From the NCBI GenBank assembly GCA_053919585.1, contig CM132790.1: DNA of 64,000 nt. One strand, written 5' to 3'. The notes under the pieces were generated by a model that worked only from the letters and a program-made list of their open reading frames with translations, was not told the DNA's origin and did not search any database. Source of the stretch: Euprymna scolopes. Taxonomy: Eukaryota. Numbering within the stretch: position 1 is the stretch's first letter; every line of letters starts with the position of its first letter. Position numbers and translations under genes: made by a program. This document shows positions 1 to 64,000 of the stretch, in pieces.

Positions 1-616
1 TGCGTTGTCATGCCAAAGGTATGCAGTTGTTGTTGAACGCACGCGGTGTCATGGAAGTCTTCTGTATTAACTTTTTTTAGCGCATGTCCGCTTTATAGGT
101 ATAAAATTTGATATTAAAGCTCTTGGAAGCATTATTTAAAAAACATATTTTTGAATAAACAGACAAAACTAATAATGGATCTGATATGGTCCGAAATTAA
201 TAAGAAATATTTCAACTTCAAAAAAAAAAATAAATACATATAAAAAGGAAAAAAAAAGAAAGGAAAAGAGAATTTGAATGATTTTTTTCTTTTAATAAAA
301 TTTTTCATCTTAATGTGTTCCAAAAACAGTTTTATCTGTTTATTCATAGTTTTTTTTTTTTTATTTTTAAAGATGCTTCGGAGTGCTTTAATACCAAAGT
401 TTATATTTTTATCTTTTTGTTTACTCAAACTGGATTTTTGAAAAAAGAAAAAAACAAGTTTTCTTGAAGTTTTCAATAGAATTAGACTTTATAACTTATA
501 AGCCGTTATGAATTTAAGTCGAGTAAGTGTTGGGGTGTCGCATAGCGATTTCTGCTGATTATAAAATTCGACTATCTGAAGCCTCGATATCTAATTTCGT
601 TTTTGAGGAGGGACAA

Positions 617-763
617 TTTGTTTTTATTATCTTACAGTCCCGATGAAGTACGTAAATTTATTTGTTTTTATTATCTTACAGTCCCGATGAAGTACGTAAA
701 TTTATTTGTTTTTATTATCTTACGGTCTCGATGAAGTAAGTAAATTTATTTGTTTTTATTATC
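617..763. repeat. 44-bp minisatellite, left part (~3 units), interrupted by the LTR element
   Basis: Unit TTATCTTACAGTCCCGATGAAGTACGTAAATTTATTTGTTTTTA; CGATG recurs at 641, 685 and 729; the array resumes at 7031. Confidence 0.95.
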
Positions 764-1041
764 TGTTGTAAATAATACATAGCTTACCTGAGTGTAGCTG
801 CCGGAGTGAGGATGGTCTTCCAACAATCAAGAAGAACAATAGCAGTGTGGTTATTTATGCTAATAGAGTAAGGTAAATTGTTATAAAAACCTTCCTCCTT
901 TGTGAAGAGTCAGTCATTATTTTTTTTTATGTTACTGTGGTTACAAGACCTGAGAAGAAGGTCGCGAAGAAAATTGTATTTTTTTCGCAACCTCACTTCA
1001 GGTTAGCTACTCTTAGTTATATGACTTTTTTTTTTCCAACA
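764..1041 (+). repeat. 5' LTR (278 bp)
   Basis: TGTTGTAAAT...TTCCAACA; by eye it differs from the 3' LTR by 2 substitutions and 3 nt of poly-T length. Confidence 0.95.
882..915 (+). promoter_or_regulatory. Putative LTR core promoter: TATA box and initiator
   Basis: TATAAAA at 882-888; TCAGTC Inr-like motif at 910-915 with its A (912) 30 nt after the TATA start. Confidence 0.6.
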
Positions 1042-1043
1042 AT

Positions 1044-1059
1044 TTGCGAAAAAAATACA
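1044..1059 (+). promoter_or_regulatory. Non-tRNA primer-binding site complementary to the element's own LTR
   Basis: TTGCGAAAAAAATACA starts 2 nt after the LTR-terminal CA and is the exact reverse complement of LTR 975-990 (and 6965-6980); no TGG tRNA-type PBS is present. Confidence 0.7.
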
Positions 1060-1151
1060 TTAGTTCAACACAATTTCTTACAGAACTTTGAGTCATTAGT
1101 AACAGCAATTAGTGACAACTCTGGAAATTGTTCGATTACCCGTACAAGGAT

Positions 1152-4100
1152 ATGGAGACCTCTGGTACTTCAACTGTTGCAGATTCCAAGGAGCGACACC
1201 GTAACCAGATTTCCATTCTGAAGATGAAAATCAAGGGTAGGCTTCGTTTGTCCCGTGGCCCAGAGATCACTCCTGCTGTATTTTCTGTATTCCACAGGGA
1301 AATTTTGGAATATATCAACGAAGTTGAAATCTCCATCTGCAAGTTGCAACTTTCCTGTGTCTCTGAAGAGGAAAGAGAACTTATGGAGTCCGATTGGCTA
1401 AGTTACCAGCTGAATTTACGGAAGGAATTAGAAGATCTCTCACTCTTGTTACATCCTCCAGAGGCTAGTGGCTATTCGGAGCGACCTTCCCTTCCATATA
1501 CGCCTGGACCTTCTACGGATAGAGCTAATTCATCATTCACTGTTAGACTACCTCAAGTTCAAATCACTGGACCAACGTTCAGTGGTCGTGAAATGGAAAA
1601 CGATAGAATGAGTTTTTACAATTTCTTATCTCGATTTGAAAATTGTGCAGCAGGCATGGCAAATGACGCAGAAAAGTTAAACTTTTTAAAATGCTCGGTG
1701 TCTGGGAGACCTCTGCTGCTGATTAATCACTTAAGTTGCATCAATACAAATTATCAGCAAGCACTGGCAGTATTGAAACGAGAATATTTAGATGTGAGTG
1801 ACATCATTGATAAGATATTCCAAGATATTATCGATTTCTCCCCCAAGGGGGAAAATTCTTATGAGGATCTTGGTAGTTTCATCTGCAGAACAGCTTCCAT
1901 TCTGGAAGAACTGGCCAGCTCTCTCGATTGTGATTTCTCTGAGGATGGTTCTGCAGGGGCCCGATTAATGGCCAAAATACTTTTTTTGAAATTTCCGAGA
2001 GCATTGAAGGGAGAGCTTATACAGTTATGTGGCTCTAGAATTCCTTCTCTGTCTGTTTTAATGCGAGACACCAGTGAGGCTATTAAACGCTTGCTAATTA
2101 AAGGCGGCGGGTTGCCTGGTTCTTCGGATATCCATCGAAACAATTCTCGGGTAACCGTTTCAAAATCTAGAGCCACTACAACCAGAGATGTTTCTTTCCG
2201 CATAGATTCAGATTGTCAGGCTCCTTCTGGTTACTCGAGTAAACTACCTCCTCTGATTTGTGTTACCTTCGGTCGAGGAGGAAGAACCATCTCTGTAAAC
2301 TGCCTATTGGATACTGGCAGTGGCAGAACGTATTTGTCTGGTGATGTCTTGCACTCCTTGGGTTCCTTGAGTTCTGACGGTTTGGATTGTCATTTGAGGC
2401 TGACTACACTTCTCGGAGAATGTGAGCAAGTATACAGAGAGGTGAAACTGGATGTGGACTTGGGGTCTGGTCATGTGGGGCACTTTCCGGTACTGGTTGC
2501 CAACTCATTGGACCTATCCTTATATCTAAAAAATTGGCATTTGCTGTTGGAGGAGTTCAAGCGAACTGGATGTTCTCTGGCTGGGCAATTTGAATCTGTC
2601 ACTGATGCGGTGGCTATAAGTGGAATTATGGGTCTGGATCTGGTGCAACATTTGGGCCCCTTACAGTTGGTGCCTTGTTTGGGGGTCGGGCTTTCTCTGT
2701 TCCTGCTGGTTTGATTCCCTTTGGTGAGGTGGACACTTTTTTTCTACAAATCCTGCCCCTATTTCAAGAGATTATACGTTGTTCAGTGCAGTGATGGAGA
2801 ATACTCCCCAAGTGGAATCATCGCATGTTTGCTTCATCCTGGAAGCCGACCCTACCTATGCGGACCCCTGGGTGGATGTCTTTCCCTCTAGCGATGTGGA
2901 AAGAGGATTAGAGAAAATGTTCAGCATTGAGTCATTGGGCATTCAGGACGGAGAAGAAATTTCAGGATATGATTAGAGTATGATTCGGCAGTTCCAGGAA
3001 TCTATAATATTCAGGGATGGTAAATATCATGTGCAATTACCCTGGCATGCAGATAAGCTGGCTCTGGTTCCTTCTAATCATGCTATTGCTTTGCACGTTT
3101 TGGATCGTGTGGTCAGGAGCCTGGAGAAGAAGGGGCTGTACCAGGAGTATGTAGATGTATTCCTTCAGCAGCTACAAGAGGGCATCATAGAGGAAATACA
3201 GGTGGATCCTCAAAATTTTGTGGACTATGTATGGGTGCCTCATCGGCCAGTTTTCAAGACGGATCCGGCAGCTACTACTAAAATCAGGCCTGTATTTAAC
3301 TGTAGCTTGAAGGTCGGTAACTCTGCCTCTCTTAACGAGGCTGCATACTCTGGTGTGAATATGACAGGAGATATGTTGGACCTGTTGATGTCTTTTAGTT
3401 TTTTTTTGTTGATTTTTAGTCTTGATTGCAGACATCAGGAAAGCTTTCTTGATGGTTCGCCTTGCACTGGAGGCAGACAAGAACAGGTTCTGTTTTTTTG
3501 TGAAGGATGGTGATCGCCTTCGATGTTTCCGCTATGCCACATTGATTTTCCGGTTCACCTCGAGTCCCTTTATATTGGGAAGTATCTTGAAGTTTCATGC
3601 AGCCCAATATCCCTTTGATGAATGTCGAGTTGCGATGGAGAACCAATTCTATGTCGACAACCTGGTGGTTACTGAGTCTGACCCAGCAAAGCTTGTAAGG
3701 CTGTATTCCCAGGTTAGGAGGCGGTTGCAGGAAGGTGGATTTGTGGTGCAGTCCTGTAACTCAAACTGCGACAGCCTTAGGGAGGAGATGAGGAAAGATG
3801 GTACATTGAGTACTCATGAGGCCGGATGGGAGATGGTGCTCGGGTACCGGTATGATCCCGCACTGCTCCTGTTAAGTGTGATCCGAGTGCATCTACTAAG
3901 AGGCGAATCCTTTCGGAATCGGCAAAGGTATTTGATCCCTTATCTCTTTGCCTGCCTGTGACTATAAGGAGTAGGATTTTGGTGGGAGAATTATGGAAGC
4001 GAGGCGTGCAATGGGATGAGGAAGTCTCTCCAGAGTTTCAGTCTTCTTGGAGGAACCTGGCAGAAGACTTATCTAAATTGAGTGACATGCATTTCTGCAG

Positions 4101-6501
4101 ACAGGCCCATGACGGGAACCGAACTGGAGAGTTATACCTGTTTTGTGACGCTTCTAAAGAAGCATATGGATTTGCAGCCTACTATGTTCAGTACAACAAT
4201 TCTGCATTGATCTTTGCCAAAGCACGAGTGGCTCCAGTGAAGGATAAGACATTACCAACTTTAGAACTAATGGCGGTATTTCTTGCTCTGAAGTGTTTGC
4301 CCACTATCTTGGTAGGATGCAAGGGTGTCCGCCCTTCTAGGTTGTGTGTGGTAACAGATGCACAAGTAGTATTGTCATGGATTTTATCAGAAACGATGAC
4401 TAGTAAAAGCATCTTTGCTAGAAACAGGTTAAAGGATGTGCTGCTAATGAGCTTGGATTTGGAAACGAATTACGGCATCAGGCCGACCTTTAGGTATGTT
4501 TCTACCACCGAAAACCCGGCTGACTTGATCACTCATGGATTAACGATAAGGAAGTTCCGAGACAACTTTGACTTTTGGTACTATGGCCCTTCTTGGTTGC
4601 GCGGTGGGGTCTTGACTTGGCCGGAGCAGGAGTTGCCCTGTCTTGATGATAGGTGCCAGCAGATTGTTCGTTCATCAACAAATTTTGCGGTGATTGTGGA
4701 TGAGGAGTGTGCTTCGGTGATCTCCATGCGGCGGTTCTCTACGTTTACCCGTTTGTTGAGGGTAACTTCTTTAGTCTTCCGATTCATCGGCTTGATGAGG
4801 AAAAGGGAAGACAACTACAACAAGAAAGCCGCAATTTACTTAATAAAATGTTCTCAACAGCAGGAATTTATGGCTGAATTGAATTACCAGCGGAATCCTA
4901 TGGTAAAGCCTGCACCTAATCGTGTTCGAGCACTAGATCTTTTTCTGGATGAGGAAGGGTTGATCCGCTCGCATGGACGGCTGGACAGGTCTTCTCAGTT
5001 TTCTTATGAAGTTAAGAATCCCTTGTTGCTGGGCAAGAATCATCACCTGACCCGACTTGTAATATTAGACTGCCATCTTAAATGTTCCCATCTGGGTACA
5101 GGATCAACCTTAACGGAATTGAGATGTCAAGGATACTGGGTGCCTCAAGGGAGGCAGGCAGTCAAAAATGCCCTGAATTCCTGCACAAGGTGTAAAAGAT
5201 ACAATTCTAGGCCGGTACTGCCTGAGAACATGGCCAATCTACCAACTTCTCGTGTCGAATTTGAGGTTCCTTATAGGAATACTGGAGTGGACTTCACAGG
5301 ACATTTTTGGGTGAAGGAGGGTAACAGTGAGAAAAAAATGTATCTGTTGTTGTTCACTTGTTTGAGTGTAAGAGCAGTGCATATAGAGGTGGTACCTGAC
5401 ATGAGTATATTGTCCTTTTTTCAGGCTCTAGTCAGATTTACTAATGCACATGGTGTTCCAGAGTCAATTCTCAGCGACAACGCAAAAACCTTTCTGGGTA
5501 GTGGAAGACTGTTTAAGCGCCTTTGTCTTCTCCAGGACTACCAGGCCAAATTTGGGTCATGTAACATTAAGTAGGAGACAATTCCTCTATTTTCCCCCTG
5601 GGTTGGAGGTGTATGGGAGCGTAGCATCAAGACTTTAAAATCTTGCCTATACAAGGTCATTGGTAGGGGTAAGGTAGATTATTATACCTTCCTAACTATT
5701 GTCTCAGATATTCAGCGGGCTGTAAACAACAGGCCCCTTACTTATCAAGAGTCCGCTGACAGGCAACCAATGATTATCACACCCAATATGTTTATTAGAC
5801 CCAATAAAAGCCCTGGTCTATTGGTACCGTTGGGAAGAGATGATCTCTCCACCATGGTTCCTCCCAGCCGGAGAAGGTTGATCGAGACGATTGGATTACG
5901 AAATGAATGGTTGTCAAGATTTAGAGAACTGTGGTACAGGGAGTACCTTCTGGATCTTAGAGGAAGGATGCCAGGAAGATCTCGGATACCATTTCAGAAT
6001 CGCATTAAAAGAAATGATGTAGTCTTGGTCAAGAGCCCTTTAAAACCACGACCCTTTTGGATGTTGGGTACTATACTTGAGGTTCTCCCAGGACAAGATG
6101 GAGTGGTGAGGACAGTTCGTGTCAGACAGGGCGACGGTGTGGTGAACGTCCATTCACTGAAGAATTTATATCCAATAGAAATTTCACAATCTGATGATGA
6201 TCTTGGGGAAAGTGAACCAAATCAGGCGGGTGCATCCTCGCCTGTTGCTGCAGGTAGCAGTCAAAACCAGGAATCCTCTAGTTCATTTTCGGAAGGAGAT
6301 GGCACCATTTGGTTGTGTCCTGCCTGCAATAGACCTCAAGGGAACCAAGATATGATATGCTGCGATTCCTGTGATGAGTGGTATCATTTTGAGTGTGTTG
6401 GAATTGACTTGGCTCCACCCGCTAGACATAAATGGTACTGCAGTGATTGTGCACCTCAAAGGAGACGAAGGGGTAGACCTAGTCTGTTACCCGATCAATA
6501 G
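1152..6501 (+). pseudogene. Disrupted gag-pol polyprotein of the BEL/Pao element
   Basis: ORF pieces 1128-2714 (DUF1759-like Gag, protease LLDTGS), 2779-3513, 3422-3961 (RT YVDN 3650-3661), 3958-5574 (RNase H, IN HHCC, GVDFTG, SDNA), WERS after a TAG at 5572, and 5770-6501 (IN C-terminus, PHD). About 4 frameshifts and 2 in-frame stops. Confidence 0.9.
6307..6480 (+). other. C4HC3 PHD finger plus AT-hook at the integrase C-terminus
   Basis: IWLCPACNRPQGNQDMICCDSCDEWYHFECVGIDLAPPARHKWYCSDC then RRRRGRP, in frame with the integrase and inside the LTRs. Confidence 0.9.
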
Positions 6502-6664
6502 AAGTAGTCTTGGGTAGGACTATAAACTACAACCGACAGCGGGGCCTAGGCTAAGGGACAGAATGAGGGTACCCTGAACCACTGTTACCTCCAGGTAGCC
6601 CTTGACTGAGGCCTAGCACCTGTTAGTCCCCCTGCAGGGTCACGCCAACTTAGTTTTTTTATGA

Positions 6665-6666
<2 letters not shown>

Positions 6667-6723
<57 letters not shown>
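6667..6723. repeat. (AT)n microsatellite in the element's 3' UTR
   Basis: Pure AT run. Confidence 0.95.
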
Positions 6724-6728
<5 letters not shown>

Positions 6729-6748
6729 CACTTTTTTTTTCTTTTGTT

Positions 6749-6755
6749 GGGAGAG
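6749..6755 (+). promoter_or_regulatory. Short polypurine tract
   Basis: GGGAGAG abuts the 3' LTR and follows a T-rich tract. Confidence 0.6.
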
Positions 6756-7030
6756 TGTTGTAAATAATACATAGCTTACCTGAGTGTAGCTGCCGGAGTG
6801 AGGATGGTCTTCCAACAATCAAGAAGAACAATAGCATTGTGGTTATTTATGCTAATAGAGTAAGGTAAATTGTTATAAAAACCTTCCTCCTTTGTGAAGA
6901 GTCAGTCATTATTTTTTTATGTTACTGTGGTTACAAGACCTGAGAAGAAGGTCGCGAAGAAGATTGTATTTTTTTCGCAACCTCACTTCAGGTTAGCTAC
7001 TCTTAGTTATATGACTTTTTTTTTCCAACA
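6756..7030 (+). repeat. 3' LTR (275 bp)
   Basis: Near-identical copy of 764-1041. Confidence 0.95.
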
Positions 7031-7168
7031 TATCTTACAGTCCCGATGAAGTACGTAAATTTATTTGTTTTTATTATCTTACGGTCTCGATGAAGTACGT
7101 AAATTTATTTGTTTTTATTATCTTACGGTCCAGATGAAGTACGTAAATTTATTTGTTTTTATTATCTT
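7031..7168. repeat. 44-bp minisatellite, right part (~3 units)
   Basis: Same unit as 617-763, in register across the insertion. Confidence 0.95.
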
Positions 7169-11881: not shown

Positions 11882-14800
11882 CTTTTATACTTCTCTATCT
11901 AGTCTTTATTCATCAAACTCCCGCATACACTTTCATAATTCTCTATCTAGTCTTTATTCATCAAACTCCCGTATACACTTTCATAATTCTCTATCTAGTC
12001 TTTATTCATCAAACTCCCGTATACACTTTCATAATTCTCTATCTAGTCTTTATTCATCAAACTCCCGCATACACTTTCATAATTCTCTATCTAGTCTTTA
12101 TTAATCAAACTCCCGTATACACTTTCATAATTCTCTATCTAGTCTTTATTCATCAAACTCCCGCATACACTTTCATAATTCTCTATCTAGTCTTTATTCA
12201 TCAAACTCCCGTATACACTTTCATAATTCTCTATCTAGTCTTTATTCATCAAACTCCCGTATACACTTTCATAATTCTCTATCTAGTCTTTATTCATCCA
12301 ACTCCCATATACACTTTCATAATTCTCTATCTAGTCTTTATTCATCCAACTCCCATATACACTTTCATAATTCTCTATCTAGTCTTTATTCATCCAACTC
12401 CCATATACACTTTCATAATTCTCTATCTAGTCTTTATTCATCCAACTCCCATATACACTTTTATAATTATCTATATAGTCTTTATTCATCCAACTCCCAT
12501 ATACACTTTTATAATTCTCTATCTAGTCTTTATTCATCCAACTCCCATATACACTTTTATAATTCTCTATCTAGTCTTTATTCATCCAACTCCCATATAC
12601 ACTTTTATAATTCTCTATCTAGTCTTTATTCATCCAACTCCCATATACACTTTCATAATTCTCTATCTAGTCTTTATTCATCAAACTCCCATATACACTT
12701 TTATAATTCTCTATCTAGTCTTTATTCATCCTACTCCCATATACACTTTTATAATTCTCTATCTAGTCTTTATTCATCCAACTCCCATATACACTTTTAT
12801 AATTCTCTATCTAGTCTTTATTCATCCAACTCCCATATACACTTTTATAATTCTCTATCTAGTCTTTATTCATCCAACTCCCATATACACTTTTATAATT
12901 CTCTATCTAGTCTTTATTCATCCAACTCCCATATACACTTTCATAATTCTCTATCTAGTCTTTATTCATCAAACTCCCATATACACTTTTATAATTCTCT
13001 ATCTAGTCTTTATTCATCCTACTCCCATATACACTTTTATAATTCTCTATCTAGTCTTTATTCATCCAACTCCCATATACACTTTTATAATTCTCTATCT
13101 AGTCTTTATTCATCCTACTCCCATATACACTTTTATAATTCTCTATCTAGTCTTTATAATCCAACTCCCATATACACTTTTATACTTCTCTATCTAGTCT
13201 TTATTCATCCAACTCCCGTATACACTTTCATAATTCTCTATCTAGTCTTTATAATCCAACTCCCATATACACTTTTATACTTCTCTATCTAGTCTTTATT
13301 CATCCAACTCCCGTATACACTTTCATAATACTCTATCTAGTCTTTATAATCCAACTCCCATATACACTTTTATACTTCTCTATCTAGTCTTTATTCATCC
13401 AACTCCCGTATACACTTTCATAATTCTCTATCTAGTCTTTATAATCCAACTCCCGTATACACTTTTATACTTCTCTATCTAGCCTTTATTCATCCAACTC
13501 CCGTATACAGTTTTATAATTCTCTATCTAGTCTTTATAATCCAACTCCCATATACACTTTTATAATTCTCTATCTAGTCTTTATTCATCCAACTCCCATA
13601 TACACTTTTATAATTCTCTATCTAGTCTTTATTCATCCAACTCCCATATACACTTTTATAATTCTCTATATAGTCTTTATTCATCCAACTCCCGTATACA
13701 CTTTCATAATTCTCTATCTAGTCTTTATTCATCAAACTCCCGCATACACTTTCATAATTCTCTATCTAGTCTTTATTCATCAAACTCCCGCATACACTTT
13801 CATAATTCTCTATCTAGTCTTTATTCATCAAACTCCCGTATACACTTTCATAATTCTCTATCTAGTCTTTATTCATCAAACTCCCATATACACTTTTATA
13901 CTTCTCTATCTAGTCTTTATTCATCAAACTCCCGTATACACTTTCATAATTCTCTATCTAGTCTTTATTCATCAAACTCCCATATACACTTTTATAATTC
14001 TCTATCTAGTCTTTATTCATCAAACTCCCGCATACACTTTCATAATTCTCTATCTAGTCTTTATTCATCAAACTCCCGCATACACTTTCATAATTCTCTA
14101 TCTAGTCTTTATTCATCAAACTCCCGCATACACTTTCATAATTCTCTATCTAGTCTTTATTCATCAAACTCCCGCATACACTTTCATAATTCTCTATCTA
14201 GTCTTTATTCATCAAACTCCCGCATACACTTTCATAATTCTCTATCTAGTCTTTATTCATCAAACTCCCGTATACACTTTCATAATTCTCTATCTAGTCT
14301 TTATTCATCAAACTCCCGTATACACTATCATAATTCTCTATCTAGTCTTTATTCATCAAACTCCCGTATACACTTTCATAATTCTCTATCTAGTCTTTAT
14401 TCATCAAACTCCCGTATACACTTTCATAATTCTCTATCTAGTCTTTATTCATCCAACTCCCATATACACTTTCATAATTCTCTATCTAGTCTTTATTCAT
14501 CCAACTCCCATATACACTTTCATAATTCTCTATCTAGTCTTTATTAATCCAACTCCCATATACACTTTTATAATTATCTATATAGTCTTTATTCATCCAA
14601 CTCCCATATACACTTTTATAATTCTCTATCTAGTCTTTATTCATCCAACTCCCATATACACTTTTATAATTCTCTATCTAGTCTTTATTCATCCAACTCC
14701 CATATACACTTTTATAATTCTCTATCTAGTCTTTATAATCCAACTCCCATATACACTTTCATAATTCTCTATCTAGTCTTTATTCATCCAACTCCCATAT

Positions 14801-17800
14801 ACACTTTCATAATTCTCTATCTAGTCTTTATTCATCCAACTCTCATATACACTTTCATAATTCTCTATCTAGTCTTTATTCATCCAACTCCCATATACAC
14901 TTTTATAATTCTCTATCTAGTCTTTATTCATCCTACTCCCATATACACTTTTATAATTCTCTATCTAGTCTTTATAATCCAACTCCCATATACACTTTTA
15001 TACTTCTCTATCTAGTCTTTATTCATCCAACTCCCGTATACACTTTCATAATTCTCTATCTAGTCTTTATAATCCAACTCCCATATACACTTTTATACTT
15101 CTCTATCTAGTCTTTATTCATCCAACTCCCGTATACACTTTCATAATACTCTATCTAGTCTTTATAATCCAACTCCCATATACACTTTTATACTTCTCTA
15201 TCTAGTCTTTATTCATCCAACTCCCGTATACACTTTCATAATTCTCTATCTAGTCTTTATAATCCAACTCCCGTATACACTTTTATACTTCTCTATCTAG
15301 TCTTTATTCATCCAACTCCCGTATACAGTTTTATAATTCTCTATCTAGTCTTTATAATCCAACTCCCATATACACTTTTATAATTCTCTATCTAGTCTTT
15401 ATTCATCCAACTCCCATATACACTTTTATAATTCTCTATATAGTCTTTATTCATCCAACTCTCATATACACTTTTATAATTCTCTATCTAGTCTTTATTC
15501 ATCCAACTCCCATATACACTTTTATAATTCTCTATCTAGTCTTTATTCATCCAACTCCCATATACACTTTTATAATTTTCTATCTAGTCTTTATTCATCC
15601 AACTCCCATATACACTTTTATAATTCTCTATATAGTCTTTATTCATCCAACTCCCATATACATATTTATAATTCTCTATCTAGTCTTTATTCATCCAACT
15701 CCCATATACACTTTTATAATTCTCTATCTAGTCTTTATTCATCCAACTCCCATATACACTTTTATAATTCTCTATATAGTCTTTATTCATCCAACTCCCA
15801 TATACACTTTTATAATTCTCTATCTAGTCTTTATTTATCAAACTCCCGTATACACTTTCATAATTCTCTATCTAGTCTTTATTGATCCAACTCCCATATA
15901 CACTTTCATAATTCTCTATCTAGTCTTTATTCATCCAACTCCCATATACACTTTCATAATTCTCTATATAGTCTTTATTCATCCAACTCCCGTATACACT
16001 TTCATAATTCTCTATCTAGTCTTTATTCATCAAACTCCCGCATACACTTTCATAATTCTCTATCTAGTCTTTATTCATCAAACTCCCGCATACACTTTCA
16101 TAATTCTCTATCTAGTCTTTATTCATCAAACTCCCGTATACACTTTCATAATTCTCTATCTAGTCTTTATTCATCAAACTCCCGTATACACTTTCATAAT
16201 TCTCTATCTAGTCTTTATTCATCCAACTCCCATATACACTTTCATAATTCTCTATCTAGTCTTTATTCATCCAACTCCCATATACACTTTTATACTTCTC
16301 TATCTAGTCTTTATTCATCCAACTCCCATATACACTTTCATAATTCTCTATCTAGTCTTTATTCATCCAACTCCCGTATACACTTTCATAATTCTCTATC
16401 TAGTCTTTATTCATCAAACTCCCATATACACTTTCATAATTCTCTATCTAGTCTTTATTCATCCAACTCCCATATACACTTTCATAATTCTCTATCTAGT
16501 CTTTATTCATCCAACTCCCATATACACTTTTATAATTATCTATCTAGTCTTTATTCATCCAACTCCCATATACACTTTTATAATTCTCTATCTAGTCTTT
16601 ATTCATCCAACTCCCATATACACTTTTATAATTCTCTATCTAGTCTTTATTCATCCAACTCCCATATACACTTTTATAATTCTCTATCTAGTCTTTATAA
16701 TCCAACTCCCATATACACTTTCATAATTCTCTATCTAGTCTTTATTCATCCAACTCTCATATACACTTTCATAATTCTCTATCTAGTCTTTATTCATCCA
16801 ACTCCCATATACACTTTTATAATTCTCTATCTAGTCTTTATTCATCCTACTCCCATATACACTTTTATAATTCTCTATCTAGTCTTTATAATCCAACTCC
16901 CATATACACTTTTATACTTCTCTATCTAGTCTTTATTCATCCAACTCCCGTATACACTTTCATAATTCTCTATCTAGTCTTTATAATCAAACTCCCATAT
17001 ACACTTTTATACTTCTCTATCTAGGCTTTATTCATCCAACTCCCGTATACACTTTCATAATTCTCTATCTAGTCTTTATAATCCAACTCCCATATACACT
17101 TTTATACTTCTCTATCTAGTCTTTATTCATCCAACTCCCGTATACACTTTCATAATTCTCTATCTAGTCTTTATAATCCAACTCCCGTATACACTTTTAT
17201 ACTTCTCTATCTAGTCTTTATTCATCCACCTCCCGTATACAGTTTTATAATTCTCTATCTAGTCTTTATAATCCAACTCCCATATACACTTTTATAATTC
17301 TCTATCTAGTCTTTATTCATCCAACTCCCATATACACTTTTATAATTCTCTATATAGTCTTTATTCATCCAACTCTCATATACACTTTTATAATTCTCTA
17401 TCTAGTCTTTATTCATCCAACTCCCATATACACTTTTATAATTCTCTATCTAGTCTTTATTCATCCAACTCCCATATACACTTTTATAATTTTCTATCTA
17501 GTCTTTATTCATCCAACTCCCATATACACTTTTATAATTCTCTATATAGTCTTTATTCATCCAACTCCCATATACATATTTATAATTCTCTATCTAGTCT
17601 TTATTCATCCAACTCCCATATACACTTTTATAATTCTCTATCTAGTCTTTATTCATCCAACTCCCATATACACTTTTATAATTCTCTATATAGTCTTTAT
17701 TCATCCAACTCCCATATACACTTTTATAATTCTCTATCTAGTCTTTATTTATCAAACTCCCGTATACACTTTCATAATTCTCTATCTAGTCTTTATTGAT

Positions 17801-20800
17801 CCAACTCCCATATACACTTTCATAATTCTCTATCTAGTCTTTATTCATCCAACTCCCATATACACTTTCATAATTCTCTATATAGTCTTTATTCATCCAA
17901 CTCCCGTATACACTTTCATAATTCTCTATCTAGTCTTTATTCATCAAACTCCCGCATACACTTTCATAATTCTCTATCTAGTCTTTATTCATCAAACTCC
18001 CGTATACACTTTCATAATTCTCTATCTAGTCTTTATTCATCAAACTCCCGTATACACTTTCATAATTCTCTATCTAGTCTTTATTCATCCAACTCCCATA
18101 TACACTTTCATAATTCTCTATCTAGTCTTTATTCATCCAACTCCCATATACACTTTTATACTTCTCTATCTAGTCTTTATTCATCCAACTCCCATATACA
18201 CTTTCATAATTCTCTATCTAGTCTTTATTCATCCAACTCCCGTATACACTTTCATAATTCTCTATCTAGTCTTTATTCATCAAACTCCCATATACACTTT
18301 CATAATTCTCTATCTAGTCTTTATTCATCCAACTCCCATATACACTTTCATAATTCTCTATCTAGTCTTTATTCATCCAACTCCCATATACACTTTTATA
18401 ATTATCTATCTAGTCTTTATTCATCCAACTCCCATATACACTTTTATAATTCTCTATCTAGTCTTTATTCATCCAACTCCCATATACACTTTTATAATTC
18501 TCTATCTAGTCTTTATTCATCCAACTCCCATATACACTTTTATAATTCTCTATCTAGTCTTTATAATCCAACTCCCATATACACTTTCATAATTCTCTAT
18601 CTAGTCTTTATTCATCCAACTCTCATATACACTTTCATAATTCTCTATCTAGTCTTTATTCATCCAACTCCCATATACACTTTTATAATTCTCTATCTAG
18701 TCTTTATTCATCCTACTCCCATATACACTTTTATAATTCTCTATCTAGTCTTTATAATCCAACTCCCATATACACTTTTATACTTCTCTATCTAGTCTTT
18801 ATTCATCCAACTCCCGTATACACTTTCATAATTCTCTATCTAGTCTTTATAATCAAACTCCCATATACACTTTTATACTTCTCTATCTAGTCTTTATTCA
18901 TCCAACTCCCGTATACACTTTCATAATACTCTATCTAGTCTTTATAATCCAACTCCCATATACACTTTTATACTTCTCTATCTAGTCTTTATTCATCCAA
19001 CTCCCGTATACACTTTCATAATTCTCTATCTAGTCTTTATAATCCAACTCCCGTATACACTTTTATACTTCTCTATCTAGTCTTTATTCATCCAACTCCC
19101 GTATACAGTTTTATAATTCTCCATCTAGTCTTTATAATCCAACTCCCATATACACTTTCATAATTCTCTATCTAGTCTTTATTCATCCAACTCCCATATA
19201 CACTTTTATAATTCTCTATATAGTCTTTATTCATCCAACTCTCATATACACTTTTATAATTCTCTATCTAGTCTTTATTCATCCAACTCCCATATACACT
19301 TTTATAATTCTCTATCTAGTCTTTATTCATCCAACTCCCATATACACTTTTATAATTTTCTATCTAGTCTTTATTCATCCAACTCCCATATACACTTTTA
19401 TAATTCTCTATATAGTCTTTATTCATCCAACTCCCATATACACATTTATAATTCTCTATCTAGTCTTTATTCATCCAACTCCCATATACACTTTTATAAT
19501 TCTCTATCTAGTCTTTATTCATCCAACTCCCATATACACTTTTATAATTCTGTATATAGTCTTTATTCATCCAACTCCCATATACACTTTTATACTTCTC
19601 TATATAGTCTTTATTCATCCAACTCCCATATACACTTTTATAATTCTCTATCTAGTCTTTATTCATCCAACTCCCATATACACTTTTATAATTCTCTATA
19701 TAGTCTTTATTCATCCAACTCTCATATACACTTTTATACTTCTCTATCTAGTCTTTATAATCCAACTCCCATATACACTTTTATAATTCTCTATCTAGTC
19801 TTTATTCACCCAACTCCTATATACACTTTTCTAATTCTCTATCTAGTCTTTATTCATCCAACTCTCATATACACTTTTATACTTCTCTATCTAGTCTTTA
19901 TTCATACAACTCCCATATACACTTTTATAATTCTCTATCTAGTCTTTATTCATCCAACTCCCATATAAACTTTTATAATTCTCTATATAGTCTTTATTTA
20001 TCCAACTCCCATATACACTTTTATAATTCTCTATCTAGTCTTTATTTATCCAACTCCCATATACACTTTTATAATTCTCTATCTAGTCTTTATTCATCCA
20101 ACTACCATATACACTTTCATAATTCTCTATCTAGTCTTTATTCATCCAACTCCCATATACACTTTTATAATTCTCTATCTAGTCTTTATTCATCCAACTC
20201 CCATATACACTTTCATAATTCTCTATCTAGTCTTTATTCATCAAACTCCCATATACACTTTTATAATTCTCTATCTAGTCTTTATTCATCCTACTCCCAT
20301 ATACACTTTTATAATTCTCTATCTAGTCTTTATTCATCCAACTCCCATATACACTTTTATAATTCTCTATCTAGTCTTTATTCATCCTACTCCCATATAC
20401 ACTTTTATAATTCTCTATCTAGTCTTTATAATCCAACTCCCATATACACTTTTATACTTCTCTATCTAGTCTTTATTCATCCAACTCCCGTATACACTTT
20501 CATAATTCTCTATCTAGTCTTTATAATCCAACTCCCATATACACTTTTATACTTCTCTATCTAGTCTTTATTCATCCAACTCCCGTATACACTTTCATAA
20601 TACTCTATCTAGTCTTTATAATCCAACTCCCATATACACTTTTATACTTCTCTATCTAGTCTTTATTCATCCAACTCCCGTATACACTTTCATAATTCTC
20701 TATCTAGTCTTTATAATCCAACTCCCGTATACACTTTTATACTTCTCTATCTAGCCTTTATTCATCCAACTCCCGTATACAGTTTTATAATTCTCTATCT

Positions 20801-23800
20801 AGTCTTTATAATCCAACTCCCATATACACTTTTATAATTCTCTATCTAGTCTTTATTCATCCAACTCCCATATACACTTTTATAATTCTCTATCTAGTCT
20901 TTATTCATCCAACTCCCATATACACTTTTATAATTCTCTATATAGTCTTTATTCATCCAACTCCCATATACACTTTTATAATTCTCTATCTAGTCTTTAT
21001 TCATCAAACTCCCGTATACACTTTCATAATTCTCTATCTAGTCTTTATTCATCAAACTCCCGTATACACTTTCATAATTCTCTATCTAGTCTTTATTCAT
21101 CAAACTCCCGCATACACTTTCATAATTCTCTATCTAGTCTTTATTCATCAAACTCCCGCATACACTTTCATAATTCTCTATCTAGTCTTTATTCATCAAA
21201 CTCCCGTATACACTTTCATAATTCTCTATCTTGTCTTTATTCATCAAACTCCCGTATACACTTTCATAATTCTCTATCTAGTCTTTATTCATCCAACTCC
21301 CATATACACTTTCATAATTCTCTATCTAGTCTTTATTCATCCAACTCCCATATACACTTTCATAATTCTCTATCTAGTCTTTATTCATCCAACTCCCATA
21401 TACACTTTCATAATTCTCTATCTAGTCTTTATTAATCCAACTCCCATATACACTTTTATAATTATCTATATAGTCTTTATTCATCCAACTCCCATATACA
21501 CTTTTATAATTCTCTATCTAGTCTTTATTCATCCAACTCCCATATACACTTTTATAATTCTCTATCTAGTCTTTATTCATCCAACTCCCATATACACTTT
21601 TATAATTCTCTATCTAGTCTTTATAATCCAACTCCCATATACACTTTCATAATTCTCTATCTAGTCTTTATTCATCCAACTCCCATATACACTTTCATAA
21701 TTCTCTATCTAGTCTTTATTCATCCAACTCCCATATACACTTTCATAATTCTCTATCTAGTCTTTATTCATCCAACTCCCATATACACTTTCATAATTCT
21801 CTATCTAGTCTTTATTAATCCAACTCCCATATACACTTTTATAATTATCTATATAGTCTTTATTCATCCAACTCCCATATACACTTTTATAATTCTCTAT
21901 CTAGTCTTTATTCATCCAACTCCCATATACACTTTTATAATTCTCTATCTAGTCTTTATTCATCCAACTCCCATATACACTTTTATACTTCTCTATCTAG
22001 TCTTTATTCATCCAACTCCCGTATACACTTTCATAATTCTCTATCTAGTCTTTATTCATCCAACTCCCATATACACTTTCATAATTCTCTATCTAGTCTT
22101 TATTCATCCAACTCTCATATACACTTTCATAATTCTCTATCTAGTCTTTATTCATCCAACTCCCATATACACTTTTATAATTCTCTATCTAGTCTTTATT
22201 CATCCTACTCCCATATACACTTTTATAATTCTCTATCTAGTCTTTATAATCCAACTCCCATATACACTTTTATACTTCTCTATCTAGTCTTTATTCATCC
22301 AACTCCCGTATACACTTTCATAATTCTCTATCTAGTCTTTATAATCCAACTCCCATATACACTTTTATACTTCTCTATCTAGTCTTTATTCATCCAACTC
22401 CCGTATACACTTTCATAATTCTCTATCTAGTCTTTATAATCCAACTCCCATATACACTTTTATACTTCTCTATCTAGTCTTTATTCATCCAACTCCCGTA
22501 TACACTTTCATAATTCTCTATCTAGTCTTTATAATCCAACTCCCATATACACTTTTATACTTCTCTATCTAGTCTTTATTCATCCAACTCCCGTATACAC
22601 TTTCATAATACTCTATCTAGTCTTTATAATTCAACTCCCATATACACTTTTATACTTCTCTATCTAGTCTTTATTCATCCAACTCCCGTATACACTTTCA
22701 TAATTCTCTATCTAGTCTTTATAATCCAACTCCCGTATACACTTTTATACTTCTCTATCTAGTCTTTATTCATCCAACTCCCGTATACAGTTTTATAATT
22801 CTCTATCTAGTCTTTATAATCCAACTCCCATATACACTTTTATAATTCTCTATCTAGTCTTTATTCATCCAACTCCCATATACACTTTTATAATTCTCTA
22901 TATAGTCTTTATTCATCCAACTCTCATATACACTTTTATAATTCTCTATCTAGTCTTTATTCATCCAACTCCCATATACACTTTTATAATTCTCTATCTA
23001 GTCTTTATTCATCCAACTCCCATATACACTTTTATAATTTTCTATCTAGTCTTTATTCATCCAACTCCCATATACACTTTTATAATTCTCTATATAGTCT
23101 TTATTCATCCAACTCCCATATACATATTTATAATTCTCTATCTAGTCTTTATTCATCCAACTCCCATATACACTTTTATAATTCTCTATCTAGTCTTTAT
23201 TCATCCAACTCCCATATACACTTTTATAATTCTCTATATAGTCTTTATTCATCCAACTCCCATATACACTTTTATAATTTTCTATCTAGTCTTTATTCAT
23301 CCAACTCCCATATACACTTTTATAATTTTCTATCTAGTCTTTATTCATCCAACTCCCATATACACTTTTATAATTTTCTATCTAGTCTTTATTCATCCAA
23401 CTCCCATATACACTTTTATAATTTTCTATCTAGTCTTTATTCATCCAACTCCCATATACACTTTTATAATTCTCTATCTAGTCTTTATTCATCCAACTCC
23501 CATATACACTTTCATAATTCTCTATATAGTCTTTATTCATCCAACTCCCATATACACTTTCATAATTCTCTATCTAGTCTTTATTCATCCAACTCCCATA
23601 TACACTTTTATAATTCTCTATATAGTCTTTATTCATCCAACTCCCATATACATATTTATAATTCTCTATCTAGTCTTTATTCATCCAACTCCCATATACA
23701 CTTTTATAATTCTCTATCTAGTCTTTATTCATCCAACTCCCATATACACTTTTATAATTCTCTATATAGTCTTTATTCATCCAACTCCCATATACACTTT

Positions 23801-26719
23801 TATAATTTTCTATCTAGTCTTTATTCATCCAACTCCCATATACACTTTTATAATTTTCTATCTAGTCTTTATTCATCCAACTCCCATATACACTTTTATA
23901 ATTTTCTATCTAGTCTTTATTCATCCAACTCCCATATACACTTTTATAATTTTCTATCTAGTCTTTATTCATCCAACTCCCATATACACTTTTATAATTC
24001 TCTATCTAGTCTTTATTCATCCAACTCCCATATACACTTTCATAATTCTCTATATAGTCTTTATTCATCCAACTCCCATATACACTTTCATAATTCTCTA
24101 TCTAGTCTTTATTCATCCAACTCCCATATACACTTTCATAATTCTCTATATAGTCTTTATTCATCCAACTCCCATATACACTTTCATAATTCTCTATATA
24201 GTCTTTATTCATCCAACTCCCATATACACTTTTATAATTCTCTATATAGTCTTTATTCATCCAACTCCCATATACACTTTTATAATTTTCTATCTAGTCT
24301 TTATTCATCCAACTCCCATATACACTTTTATAATTCTCTATCTAGTCTTTATTCATCCAACTCCCATATACACTTTCATAATTCTCTATATAGTCTTTAT
24401 TCATCCAACTCCCATATACACTTTCATAATTCTCTATCTAGTCTTTATTCATCCAACTCCCATATACACTTTCATAATTCTCTATATAGTCTTTATTCAT
24501 CCAACTCCCATATACACTTTCATAATTCTCTATATAGTCTTTATTCATCCAACTCCCGTATACACTTTCATAATTCTCTATCTAGTCTTTATTCATCCAA
24601 CTCCCATATACACTTTCATAATTCTCTATATAGTCTTTATTCATCCAACTCCCATATACACTTTCATAATTCTCTATATAGTCTTTATTCATCCAACTCC
24701 CGTATACACTTTCATAATTCTCTATCTAGTCTTTATTCATCAAACTCCCGTATACACTTTCATAATTCTCTATATAGTCTTTATTCATCCAACTCCCGTA
24801 TACACTTTCATAATTCTCTATCTAGTCTTTATTCATCAAACTCCCGTATACACTTTCATAATTCTCTATATAGTCTTTATTCATCCAACTCCCGTATACA
24901 CTTTCATAATTCTCTATCTAGTCTTTATTTATCAAACTCCCGTATACACTTTCATAATTCTCTATCTAGTCTTTATTTATCAAACTCCCGTATACACTTT
25001 CATAATTCTCTATCTAGTCTTTATTCATCAAACTCCCGCATACACTTTCATAATTCTCTATCTAGTCTTTATTCATCAAACTCCCGTATACACTTTCATA
25101 ATTCTCTATCTAGTCTTTATTCATCAAACTCCCGTATACACTTTCATAATTCTCTATCTAGTCTTTATTCATCCAACTCCCATATACACTTTCATAATTC
25201 TCTATCTAGTCTTTATTCATCCAACTCCCATATACACTTTCATAATTCTCTATCTAGTCTTTATTCATCCAACTCCCATATACACTTTCATAATTCTCTA
25301 TCTAGTCTTTATTCATCCAACTCCCATATACACTTTTATAATTATCTATCTAGTCTTTATTCATCCAACTCCCATATACACTTTTATAATTCTCTATCTA
25401 GTCTTTATTCATCCAACTCCCATATACACTTTTATAATTCTCTATCTAGTCTTTATTCATCCAACTCCCATATACACTTTTATAATTCTCTATCTAGTCT
25501 TTATAATCCAACTCCCATATACACTTTCATAATTCTCTATCTAGTCTTTATTCATCCAACTCTCATATACACTTTCATAATTCTCTATCTAGTCTTTATT
25601 CATCCAACTCCCATATACACTTTTATAATTCTCTATCTAGTCTTTATTCATCCTACTCCCATATACACTTTTATAATTCTCTATCTAGTCTTTATAATCC
25701 AACTCCCATATACACTTTTATACTTCTCTATCTAGTCTTTATTCATCCAACTCCCGTATACACTTTCATAATTCACTATCTAGTCTTTATAATCAAACTC
25801 CCATATACACTTTTATACTTCTCTATCTAGTCTTTATTCATCCAACTCCCGTATACACTTTCATAATACTCTATCTAGTCTTTATAATCCAACTCCCATA
25901 TACACTTTTATACTTCTCTATCTAGTCTTTATTCATCCAACTCCCGTATACACTTTCATAATTCTCTATCTAGTCTTTATAATCCAACTCCCGTATACAC
26001 TTTTATACTTCTCTATCTAGTCTTTATTCATCCAACTCCCGTATACAGTTTTATAATTCTCTATATAGTCTTTATTCATCCAACTCCCATATACACTTTT
26101 ATAATTCTCTATCTAGTCTTTATTCATCCAACTCCCATATACACTTTCATAATTCTCTATATAGTCTTTATTCATCCAACTCCCATATACACTTTTATAA
26201 TTCCCTATCTAGTCTTTATTCATCCAACTCCCATATACACTTTTATAATTCTCTATCTAGTCTTTATTCATCCAACTCCCATATACACTTTTATAATTCT
26301 CTATCTAGTCTTTATTCATCCGATTCCCATATACCTTTATAATTCTCTATATAGTCTTTATTCATCCAACTCCCATATACACTTTTATAATTCTCTATAT
26401 AGTCTTTATTCATCCAACTCCCATATACACTTTTATAATTCTCTATATAGTCTTTATTCATCCAACTCCCATATACACTTTTATAATTCTCTATCTAATC
26501 TTTATTCATCCAACTCCCATATACACTTTTATAATTCTCTATATAGTCTTTAATCATCCAACTCCCATATACACTTTTATAATTCTCTATATAGTCTTTA
26601 TTTATCCAACTCCCATATACACTTTTATAATTCTCTATCTAGTCTTTATTCATCCAACTCCCATATACACTTTTATAATTCTCTATATAGTCTTTATTTA
26701 TCCAACTCCCATATACACT
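11882..26719. repeat. 48-bp satellite array, ~14.8 kb, ~310 monomers
   Basis: Consensus ACTTTYATAATTCTCTATCTAGTCTTTATTCATCMAACTCCCRTATAC with recurrent 47-bp variants; no spacers. Confidence 0.98.
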
Positions 26720-63256: not shown

Positions 63257-64000
63257 ATGTTTAGATTTCCTTCCTCATCATGTTCAGATTTCCGCCCTAA
63301 TCGTGTTTAGATTTCCTTCCTCATCATATTTAGATTTCTTTCCTCATCATGTTTAGATTTCCTTCCACATCGTGTTTAGATTTCCTTCCTCGTCGTGTTT
63401 AGATTTCCTCCCTCACCGGTTTTAGATTTCCTTCCTCATCATGTTTACATTTCCTTCCTCGTCGTTTTTAGATTTCCTTCCTCATCGTGTTTAGATGTCC
63501 TTCCTATCGTGTTTAGATTTCCTTCCTTATGTTTAGATTTCCTTCCTCGTCGTGTTTAGAATTCCTTTCTCATCATGTTTAGATTTCCTTTTTCATCGTG
63601 TTTAGATTTCCTTCCTCGTCGTGTTTACATTTCCTTCCTCATCATGTTTAGATTTCCTTCCTCATCATGTTTAGATTTCCTTCCTCATCATGTTTAGATT
63701 TCTTTCCTCAACATGTTTAGATTTCCTTCCTCATCATGTTTAGATTTCCTTCCTCATCATGTTTAGATTTCTTTCCTCAACATATTTAGATTTCCTTCCT
63801 TATCATGTTTAGATTTCTTTCCTCAACATGTTTAGATTTCCTTCCTCATCATGTTTAGATTTCCTTCCTCATCATGTTTAGATTTCCTGCCTCATCATGT
63901 TTAGATTTCTTTCCTCATCATGTTTAGATTTCCTTCCTCATCATGTTTAGATTTCCTTCCTCATCATGTTTAGATTTCCTTCCTCATCATGTTTAGATTT
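63257..64000. repeat. 23-bp tandem array (~32 units, runs off the window)
   Basis: Unit TTAGATTTCCTTCCTCATCATGT. Confidence 0.97.

What the first reader, a model, noticed from the sequence alone, without database searches (positions are those of the whole stretch)
764..7030. BEL/Pao retrotransposon converging on the Tf1/chromovirus design
Seen in one element: a self-complementary PBS instead of a tRNA PBS, a Gag without zinc knuckles, and a chromatin-reader domain at the integrase C-terminus. Known: a similar combination characterises Tf1 of fission yeast (Ty3/Gypsy; self-priming, no CCHC, chromodomain on IN), whereas the RT, RNase H and IN here are BEL/Pao. Inference: an independently evolved tRNA-independent, chromatin-targeting BEL/Pao lineage. 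I do not know of a description of this, but I could not search.
Basis: partly seen in the sequence, partly recalled or inferred. Interest (0 to 1): 0.88.

Follow-up and report, generated by a model that had tools for sequence, protein, structure and literature searches.

The report
Self-priming BEL/Pao retrotransposon with PHD-tagged integrase
This is a dead copy of a BEL/Pao retrotransposon that seems to start copying itself from a piece of its own RNA rather than a host tRNA, and whose integrase carries a histone-reading finger borrowed from the host transcription factor TAF3.

Summary
Window 764-7030 is one LTR retrotransposon: 278/275-nt LTRs, a 4-bp target duplication, inserted in a 44-nt tandem array. 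Its proteins are BEL/Pao. All three reported traits are real.

1. The 16 nt that start 2 nt after the 5' LTR pair perfectly with a segment inside the LTR, and there is no tRNA-type site.
2. Gag has no CCHC knuckle in any frame.
3. The integrase ends in a PHD finger, not a chromodomain. Its best solved match is the H3K4me3-reading finger of TAF3 (E 9e-18).

Eight related elements show the same self-complementary primer site with different, partly compensating sequences. Most of those keep 2-3 CCHC knuckles and lack the PHD finger. More distant relatives have ordinary TGG-type tRNA sites. Self-priming is therefore the older trait of a BEL/Pao subclade. Knuckle loss and PHD capture are later additions in a narrow lineage whose one named member is a cuttlefish.

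This copy is defective: pol has four frameshifts and two stops. I found no description of self-priming or a PHD-tagged integrase in BEL/Pao in the searchable literature. Priming and targeting are inferred, not shown.

The parts
616..763 (.). Left part of the 44-nt tandem array into which the element inserted. The last 4 bases (760-763, TATC) are one copy of the target-site duplication.
764..1041 (+). 5' LTR, 278 nt, TGTTG...CAACA. It has a TATA-like box at 882-889 and TCAGTC at 910-915.
964..988 (+). Local hairpin inside the LTR. A copy of the primer-site sequence (964-974) pairs with the primer segment. The same arrangement is present in L001.
975..990 (+). Putative self-primer segment in the LTR (TGTATTTTTTTCGCAA). 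It is also present in the 3' LTR.
1044..1059 (+). Primer-binding site (TTGCGAAAAAAATACA), 2 nt after the LTR end. It is the perfect complement of 975-990.
1152..6501 (+). gag-pol, a single reading frame in relatives. Here gag and protease are open, and pol is broken by four frameshifts and two in-frame stops.
1665..2009 (+). Gag core (DUF1759, the BEL/Pao Gag family). It is followed by a basic, Ser-rich linker with no CCHC knuckle.
2292..2504 (+). Aspartic protease (LLDTGSG motif).
3961..4323 (+). Pfam Peptidase_A17 (Pao) region at the RT/RNase H boundary.
5041..5496 (+). Integrase zinc-binding domain (H2C2) and the start of the catalytic core.
5911..6144 (+). Integrase C-terminal domain, DUF5641 (BEL/Pao-specific).
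6316..6450 (+). PHD finger (C4HC3), TAF3-like.
6460..6483 (+). Basic tail RRRRGRPS with an AT-hook-like RGRP core. The same RGRP tail is present in L001, P0167 and P0168.
6749..6755 (+). Short polypurine tract (GGGAGAG) directly before the 3' LTR.
   Evidence: similar tracts in L001, L005 and L007
6756..7030 (+). 3' LTR, 275 nt.
7031..7168 (.). Right part of the 44-nt tandem array. The first 4 bases (TATC) are the second copy of the target-site duplication.

Best explanation
This is a recently inserted but defective copy of a BEL/Pao LTR retrotransposon. It belongs to a subclade that primes minus-strand DNA synthesis with its own RNA.

Inferred priming mechanism: a 16-nt segment in the R/U5 part of the LTR folds back onto the complementary site 2 nt downstream of U5. 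By analogy with Tf1, the element's RNase H would cut at the 3' end of that segment to give the primer.

Shown, not inferred: within this subclade, the lineage of the window element has lost the CCHC knuckles of Gag. It has also fused a host-derived, TAF3-type PHD finger and an RGRP basic tail to the integrase C-terminus.

Inferred targeting: the finger would tether integration to H3K4me3-marked, promoter-proximal nucleosomes.
For: Structure of the element.

Primer site in the window: 16-nt perfect pairing at the exact primer-site position; 0/2000, 0/500 and 0/367 controls reach it.

Same design in eight relatives, with different sequences:
- L001, 11 nt; L003, 12 nt; L006, 12 nt; L007, 15 nt.
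- L005, 15 nt; L009, 14 nt; L010, 16 nt.
- Dinucleotide-shuffle controls reaching the observed length: 1/500 (L001), 31/500 (L003), 2/500 (L006), 0/500 (L007, L005, L009, L010).

Compensation: the window, L001 and L003 share TTGCGA and differ at two paired positions by changes on both sides (A:T to C:G).

Folding: when the RNA starts at the primer segment, the minimum-energy structure closes primer on site, with z from -3.6 to -6.6.

Negative controls: relatives with TGG-type tRNA sites show only 5-8 nt of such complementarity. They form a separate clade with 100% bootstrap.

Gag: no CCHC in the window, L001, P0154-P0158, P0167 or P0183, and the distance from the Gag start to the protease motif is shorter. 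Other full-length relatives carry 1-3 knuckles.

PHD finger:
- Pfam E 1.2e-10.
- Best solved match is the TAF3 PHD finger, E 9e-18; the next family scores E 6e-9.
- All eight zinc ligands are kept, as are the positions aligned to TAF3 W868, M882, W891, I883 and D889. PMC12238850 names these as the H3K4me3 cage and H3 contacts.
- The finger is in frame in the uninterrupted polyprotein P0167.
- Among 166 related proteins it occurs only in this lineage.
Against: No RNA data were available, so the transcript start is unknown. A TATA box at 882-889 and TCAGTC at 910-915 suggest a start near 912, which is 63 nt upstream of the primer segment. With that extra sequence the RNA prefers a local hairpin that hides the primer segment. 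A strict Tf1-type primer made of the first nucleotides of the RNA is therefore unproven.

In several relatives the LTR end was set partly from terminal inverted repeats and polypurine tracts, not from two LTR copies. L003's match is weakly significant on its own (31/500). L004, L011, L012, L013 and L015 are unresolved. L008, nested in the same clade, has a tRNA-type site.

One TAF3 cage residue (D877) is Gln here. The only insertion seen lies in a tandem repeat, not an evident promoter. The structure model was too poor to use.
Confidence: 0.72

Rival explanations
1. The LTR-to-leader pairing is a structural element of the genomic RNA (packaging, dimerisation, translation control, or presentation of the primer site). 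The real primer would be a host RNA such as a tRNA fragment.
For: Retroviral leaders do contain U5-leader and U5-IR stems (general knowledge; title of the Lin and Levin 1998 paper seen). A likely transcript start near 912 would make the paired segment internal. A competing hairpin exists.
Against: The paired site begins 0-7 nt after the LTR end in nine elements, which leaves no room for a separate primer site. The LTR end is defined by where priming starts. There is no TGG-type site nearby. The site sequence differs between elements while the pairing is kept, which a shared host primer would not predict.
Confidence: 0.15
2. The three traits form a co-adapted package that evolved together: self-priming made the knuckles dispensable, and the reader domain came with it.
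For: All three co-occur in the window element and in L001/P0167. Tf1 shows a similar trio (from memory).
Against: L003, L005, L006, L007 and L010 combine the self-complementary site with 2-3 CCHC knuckles and no PHD finger. On the pol tree the PHD/knuckle-less pair is one tip lineage inside the self-priming clade.
Confidence: 0.08
3. The complementarity is chance in AT-rich, homopolymer-rich sequence, and the PHD finger is an assembly or annotation chimera.
For: The paired segments contain A/T runs. L003 alone reaches only 31/500 in shuffles.
Against: Seven of the other eight loci give 0-2 of 500, all at the same anatomical position. The PHD finger recurs in independent sources (JGI, ENA, Logan) and lies in frame in an intact polyprotein.
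Confidence: 0.03

Closest known systems
Tf1 of Schizosaccharomyces pombe and the Tf1/sushi group (Ty3/Gypsy chromoviruses)
   Same: The primer site is complementary to the element's own LTR-derived RNA rather than to a tRNA. A stem-loop sits between primer and site in several relatives. Gag has no CCHC, and the integrase carries a C-terminal chromatin-reader domain. That Tf1 uses self-priming is stated in PMC5443660, PMC5445492 and PMC6317226. Tf1's knuckle-less Gag and its chromodomain are from memory.
   Different: The superfamily differs (BEL/Pao proteins). The pairing is longer (11-16 nt). It is not shown that the primer is the first nucleotides of the RNA. The traits are separable within the clade.
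Ty1/Copia TAR lineage (Houba, Osr-1) and the plant Tcn1 clade, predicted self-primers
   Same: Self-priming was inferred from sequence alone in further LTR-retrotransposon lineages (PMC6317226).
   Different: These are plant elements of the other two superfamilies. None is reported for BEL/Pao in the literature I could search.
Ordinary BEL/Pao elements
   Same: Same Gag core (DUF1759), Pao-type RT/RNase H region, integrase with DUF5641, single gag-pol frame, TG..CA LTRs and short target duplication.
   Different: Typical relatives carry 1-3 CCHC knuckles and no PHD finger. The outgroup clade has TGG-type tRNA primer sites directly after the LTR.
PHD finger of TFIID subunit TAF3 (PDB 2k16/2k17, 5c13, 5wxg)
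   Same: About half of the residues are identical over 57 positions. All zinc ligands are kept, and so are the positions aligned to W868, M882, W891, I883 and D889.
   Different: The finger is fused to a retrotransposon integrase through an acidic Ser-rich linker. The D877 position is Gln. An RGRP basic tail follows the finger.
Other transposable elements with captured reader domains: chromoviruses, CoDi-A Ty1/Copia (chromodomain); CR1, Rehavkus, Chlamys and Chlamydomonas elements (PHD)
   Same: A host chromatin-reader module is added as an accessory domain (PMC2774666; PMC8557442).
   Different: None of those reports concerns a BEL/Pao integrase or a TAF3-type finger.

Membership tests
BEL/Pao LTR retrotransposons (Belpaoviridae) | Pao-type RT/RNase H region (Pfam Peptidase_A17) | tested here: met
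   84.7 bits against a cutoff of 22.3
BEL/Pao LTR retrotransposons (Belpaoviridae) | BEL/Pao Gag core (DUF1759) | tested here: met
   The window scores 24.5 bits, just under the 25.4 cutoff. The 48%-identical Gag of the sister element, in P0167, scores 40.8 bits.
BEL/Pao LTR retrotransposons (Belpaoviridae) | Integrase with DUF5641 C-terminal domain; order PR-RT-RH-IN | tested here: met
   DUF5641 scores 43.7 bits. tblastn matches to P0004, P0005 and P0006 are colinear.
BEL/Pao LTR retrotransposons (Belpaoviridae) | Placement in a named clade (Bel, Pao, Tas, Suzu, Sinbad, Dan, Flow) | not tested
   No reference sequences of the named clades were available through the tools. Only an internal tree of 25 relatives was made.
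Tf1/sushi self-primed chromoviruses | Ty3/Gypsy RT and integrase | tested here: not met
   The proteins are BEL/Pao.
Tf1/sushi self-primed chromoviruses | Primer site complementary to the element's own RNA | tested here: met
   16 nt in the window and 11-16 nt in eight relatives
Tf1/sushi self-primed chromoviruses | The primer is the extreme 5' end of the transcript and is released by RNase H | not testable with these tools
   No transcript data were available. Promoter-like motifs hint at a start 63 nt upstream.
Tf1/sushi self-primed chromoviruses | Chromodomain at the integrase C-terminus | tested here: not met
   Pfam finds a PHD finger and no chromodomain.
TAF3-type H3K4me3-reading PHD fingers | C4HC3 zinc ligands | tested here: met
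   Regex and HMMER alignment
TAF3-type H3K4me3-reading PHD fingers | Methyl-lysine cage residues (D877, M882, W868, W891 in TAF3) | tested here: inconclusive
   Three of four are kept and D877 is Gln. The structure model was too weak to judge the geometry.
TAF3-type H3K4me3-reading PHD fingers | Binding to H3K4me3 | not testable with these tools
   Inference from sequence only

The most novel reading that the evidence does not exclude
A whole subclade of BEL/Pao elements from marine animals uses self-primed reverse transcription. That would make it a mode proposed in all three LTR-retrotransposon superfamilies. One lineage of it, whose one named member is a cuttlefish, has in addition captured the TAF3 H3K4me3-reading finger onto its integrase. 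This would be a new, independently evolved way of steering integration to active promoters.
Probability: 0.5. Interest if true: 0.75.

Novelty: new variant of a known kind. Interest (0 to 1): 0.62.

Why it matters
Self-priming has been described for Tf1/sushi (Ty3/Gypsy) and proposed for some Ty1/Copia lineages. A BEL/Pao case would show that escape from tRNA priming arose repeatedly. It would also offer a natural series: self-priming with knuckles, self-priming without knuckles, and tRNA priming. That series lets one ask what nucleocapsid knuckles are needed for.

The integrase-PHD fusion is a clean example of a host reader domain reused for target choice. It gives a testable prediction about where copies sit in cephalopod genomes, which are very rich in repeats.

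For annotation, LTR-finding pipelines that demand a tRNA-type primer site will miss or mis-score this clade.

Tried and rejected
**Searches for related DNA that failed**
- DNA around the closest cephalopod relatives could not be fetched. The files for ENA ERZ21867824 and for Acanthosepion pharaonis are too large.
- Gag-based scans of metagenome and viral contig collections found nothing.
- A pol scan of viral contigs gave only a spurious PHD-only match, L002.

**Loci left out or downgraded**
- L004, L011, L012, L013 and L015 gave no clear primer site. L014 is ambiguous because its LTR segment pairs with two places. None of these is counted.
- The L008 row used a wrong LTR end and is not used.

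**Negative or unusable results**
- The AlphaFold model of the integrase C-terminus had mean pLDDT 43, so no fold search was run.
- Rfam gave only sub-threshold noise on the TA microsatellite.
- No tRNA gene lies in the window.
- The four longest ORFs elsewhere in the window have no Pfam match.

**Literature**
- Five searches and seven papers gave no report of self-priming or an integrase PHD finger in BEL/Pao.
- The two key Lin and Levin papers are not held.
- Repbase and Dfam could not be searched.

**Considered and rejected**
- A programmed frameshift between protease and RT was considered. It is rejected because relatives have one continuous frame.

- My first notebook entry lists the bounds of the open-reading-frame pieces as the ORF tool printed them. 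That comes close to naming break places.
Full report
**What is there**

The span 764-7030 is exactly one LTR retrotransposon.
- Two direct repeats, 764-1041 and 6756-7030, start with TGTTG and end with CAACA. They differ by two substitutions and a few homopolymer indels.
- The element sits inside a 44-nt tandem array (616-763 and 7031-7168). TATC is duplicated at both junctions. An intact array unit reads straight through that point.
- No second copy lies in the window.
- A short purine tract, GGGAGAG, precedes the 3' LTR.

**Family**

Pfam gives DUF1759 (the BEL/Pao Gag core) and an aspartic protease in the first frame. Further on it gives Peptidase_A17 (Pao), an RNase H trace, the integrase zinc-binding domain and the start of the catalytic core. 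At the end come DUF5641 (the BEL/Pao integrase C-terminus) and a PHD finger.

A HMMER search of 1.84 billion representatives with the central pol piece found 32,853 relatives. The best full-length ones are 1750-1990-aa gag-pol polyproteins. tblastn of these against the element is colinear from Gag to the integrase C-terminus. It is a BEL/Pao element. I could not place it in a named clade.

**State of the copy**

Relatives encode one continuous gag-pol frame; examples are P0005, P0006 and the 1767-aa P0167. In the window, gag and protease are open. Against its closest relative, pol shows four frame changes and two in-frame stops.

With LTRs about 99% identical, two explanations fit. Either the copy was made from an already damaged template, or some of the frame changes are assembly indels. 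The LTR differences are themselves mostly homopolymer-length differences.

**Primer site in the window**

Two bases after the 5' LTR, 1044-1059 (TTGCGAAAAAAATACA) is the perfect complement of 975-990 in the LTR (TGTATTTTTTTCGCAA).
- No shuffle of the 35 nt after the LTR (0/2000) exceeded 12 nt.
- No dinucleotide shuffle of the LTR (0/500) and no internal 30-mer (0/367) exceeded 12 nt.
- The site has no TGG start, and the window holds no tRNA gene.

**Primer site in relatives**

I obtained DNA for relatives from metagenome and other small assemblies. The same anatomy recurs in eight of them:

| Locus | Pairing (nt) | Shuffles reaching it (of 500) |
|---|---|---|
| L001 | 11 | 1 |
| L003 | 12 | 31 |
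| L006 | 12 | 2 |
| L007 | 15 | 0 |
| L005 | 15 | 0 |
| L009 | 14 | 0 |
| L010 | 16 | 0 |

- In each, the site starts 0-7 nt after the inferred LTR end. Internal 30-mer controls reached the observed length 2 times in L003 and 0 times in the others.
- The sequences differ between elements. The window, L001 (TTGCGAAACAA) and L003 (TTGCGACAAAAA) share a core and differ at two paired positions by changes on both sides.
- Folded from the primer segment onward, the minimum-energy structure closes primer on site in all four RNAs tried, with z from -3.6 to -6.6.
- By contrast, L018, L019, L022, L023, L024 and L026 have classical TGG-type sites directly after the LTR end. In L022 and L026 that end is fixed by the LTR repeat itself. 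They show only 5-8 nt of such complementarity.
- On a neighbour-joining tree of the pol region these tRNA-type elements form a clade split from the rest with 100% bootstrap. All self-type elements fall on the window's side. One apparent tRNA-type element, L008, is nested among them with weak support.
- Five loci could not be resolved and one (L014) is ambiguous.

**Caveat on the mechanism**

The transcript start is unknown. In the window LTR a TATA box (882-889) and TCAGTC (910-915) have the classical spacing. That would put the start near 912, which is 63 nt 5' of the primer segment.

In the window and in L001, a copy of the site sequence lies just upstream of the primer segment and forms a local hairpin with it. 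If that stretch is in the RNA, the hairpin wins in the minimum-energy fold.

In L001, L003 and L010 the pairing stops directly after a shared AGGCA. That could instead mark a start at the primer segment. Either reading is compatible with self-priming, but only the second is strictly Tf1-like.

**Gag**

No strict or relaxed CCHC pattern occurs in any forward frame. The same holds for L001, for P0154-P0158, for P0183 (Acanthosepion pharaonis) and for the intact P0167.

In these proteins the protease motif lies about 70-130 residues closer to the N-terminus than in relatives. A basic, Ser-rich linker with few Cys or His fills the gap. Nearly all other full-length relatives carry one to three CCHC knuckles at residues 310-540.

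**PHD finger**

The finger (6316-6450) follows DUF5641 after an acidic Ser-rich linker. It is followed by RRRRGRPS, which has an AT-hook-like core (my reading, not tested).
- Against all solved structures the best hits are the TAF3 PHD finger (E 9e-18 to 1e-16). The next family is at 6e-9.
- All eight zinc ligands are present.
- Using the residue names in PMC12238850, the positions aligned to W868, M882 and W891 of the H3K4me3 cage are kept. So are I883 and D889. D877 is Gln.
- The finger is conserved in P0001 (98% identical, another read set), P0002, L001/P0004, P0167 and P0168. It is in frame in an uninterrupted polyprotein.
- An HMM of it finds no other carrier among 166 related proteins.

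It is therefore a lineage-specific capture, most likely from the host TAF3 gene.

**Distribution**

The PHD-bearing, knuckle-less lineage was found in few places: the window, one JGI metagenome contig, one ENA assembly with many copies, two Logan contigs, and the cuttlefish A. pharaonis for Gag. That suggests a cephalopod-restricted family. The wider self-priming clade comes from marine and other metagenomes of unknown hosts.

**Comparison with what is known**

- Self-priming is established for Tf1, described for the Tf1/sushi group, and predicted for the plant Tcn1 clade and the Ty1/Copia TAR lineage (PMC6317226).
- Chromodomains on integrases are known in chromoviruses and CoDi-A (PMC2774666).
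- PHD fingers are known in CR1, Rehavkus, Chlamys and Chlamydomonas elements (PMC8557442).
- The main BEL/Pao survey mentions neither primer sites, knuckles nor PHD fingers (PMC3118150).
- My searches found no paper that links BEL/Pao with self-priming or with an integrase PHD finger. Subscription literature and Repbase reports were out of reach.

**Verdict**

The three traits arose stepwise. Self-priming came first and is clade-wide. Knuckle loss and TAF3-finger capture came later and in a narrow lineage. I rate it a new variant of a known kind. Priming and targeting remain inferences from sequence.

Noticed in passing
window 11882-26719: A 14.8-kb satellite of about 310 copies of a 48-nt unit (95% matches) with extreme strand asymmetry (GC skew about -0.8).
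   Followed up: partly
window 616-763 and 7031-7168: A 44-nt tandem array that the element split on insertion. The sequence reads through the insertion point once the TATC duplication is allowed for.
   Followed up: yes
window 63257-64000: A 23-nt tandem array (32 copies) running off the end of the window.
   Followed up: no
window 964-988; L001 4384-4405: A copy of the primer-site sequence sits just 5' of the self-primer segment in the LTR and forms a hairpin with it. It could act as a switch, or could shield the 3' LTR copy of the primer. The function is unknown.
   Followed up: partly
L001 4391-4395, L003 6760-6764, L010 1293-1297: AGGCA lies next to the 5' side of the self-primer segment in three relatives: directly adjacent in L001 and L010, one base away in L003. 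It may mark the transcript start.
   Followed up: no
window 6460-6483: The basic tail RRRRGRPS after the PHD finger, also present in L001, P0167 and P0168, has the RGRP core typical of AT-hooks.
   Followed up: no
window 6667-6725: A (TA)n microsatellite lies in the element's 3' untranslated region, between the pol stop and the polypurine tract.
   Followed up: no
L003 627-6092 and 7515-12980; L010 1-2394 and 7393-9786: Some relatives are assembled as tandem copies sharing one LTR, and many metagenome contigs have identical ends of about 100-300 nt. This may reflect real tandem or circular forms, or it may be repeat collapse by the assembler.
   Followed up: no
   Followed up: no
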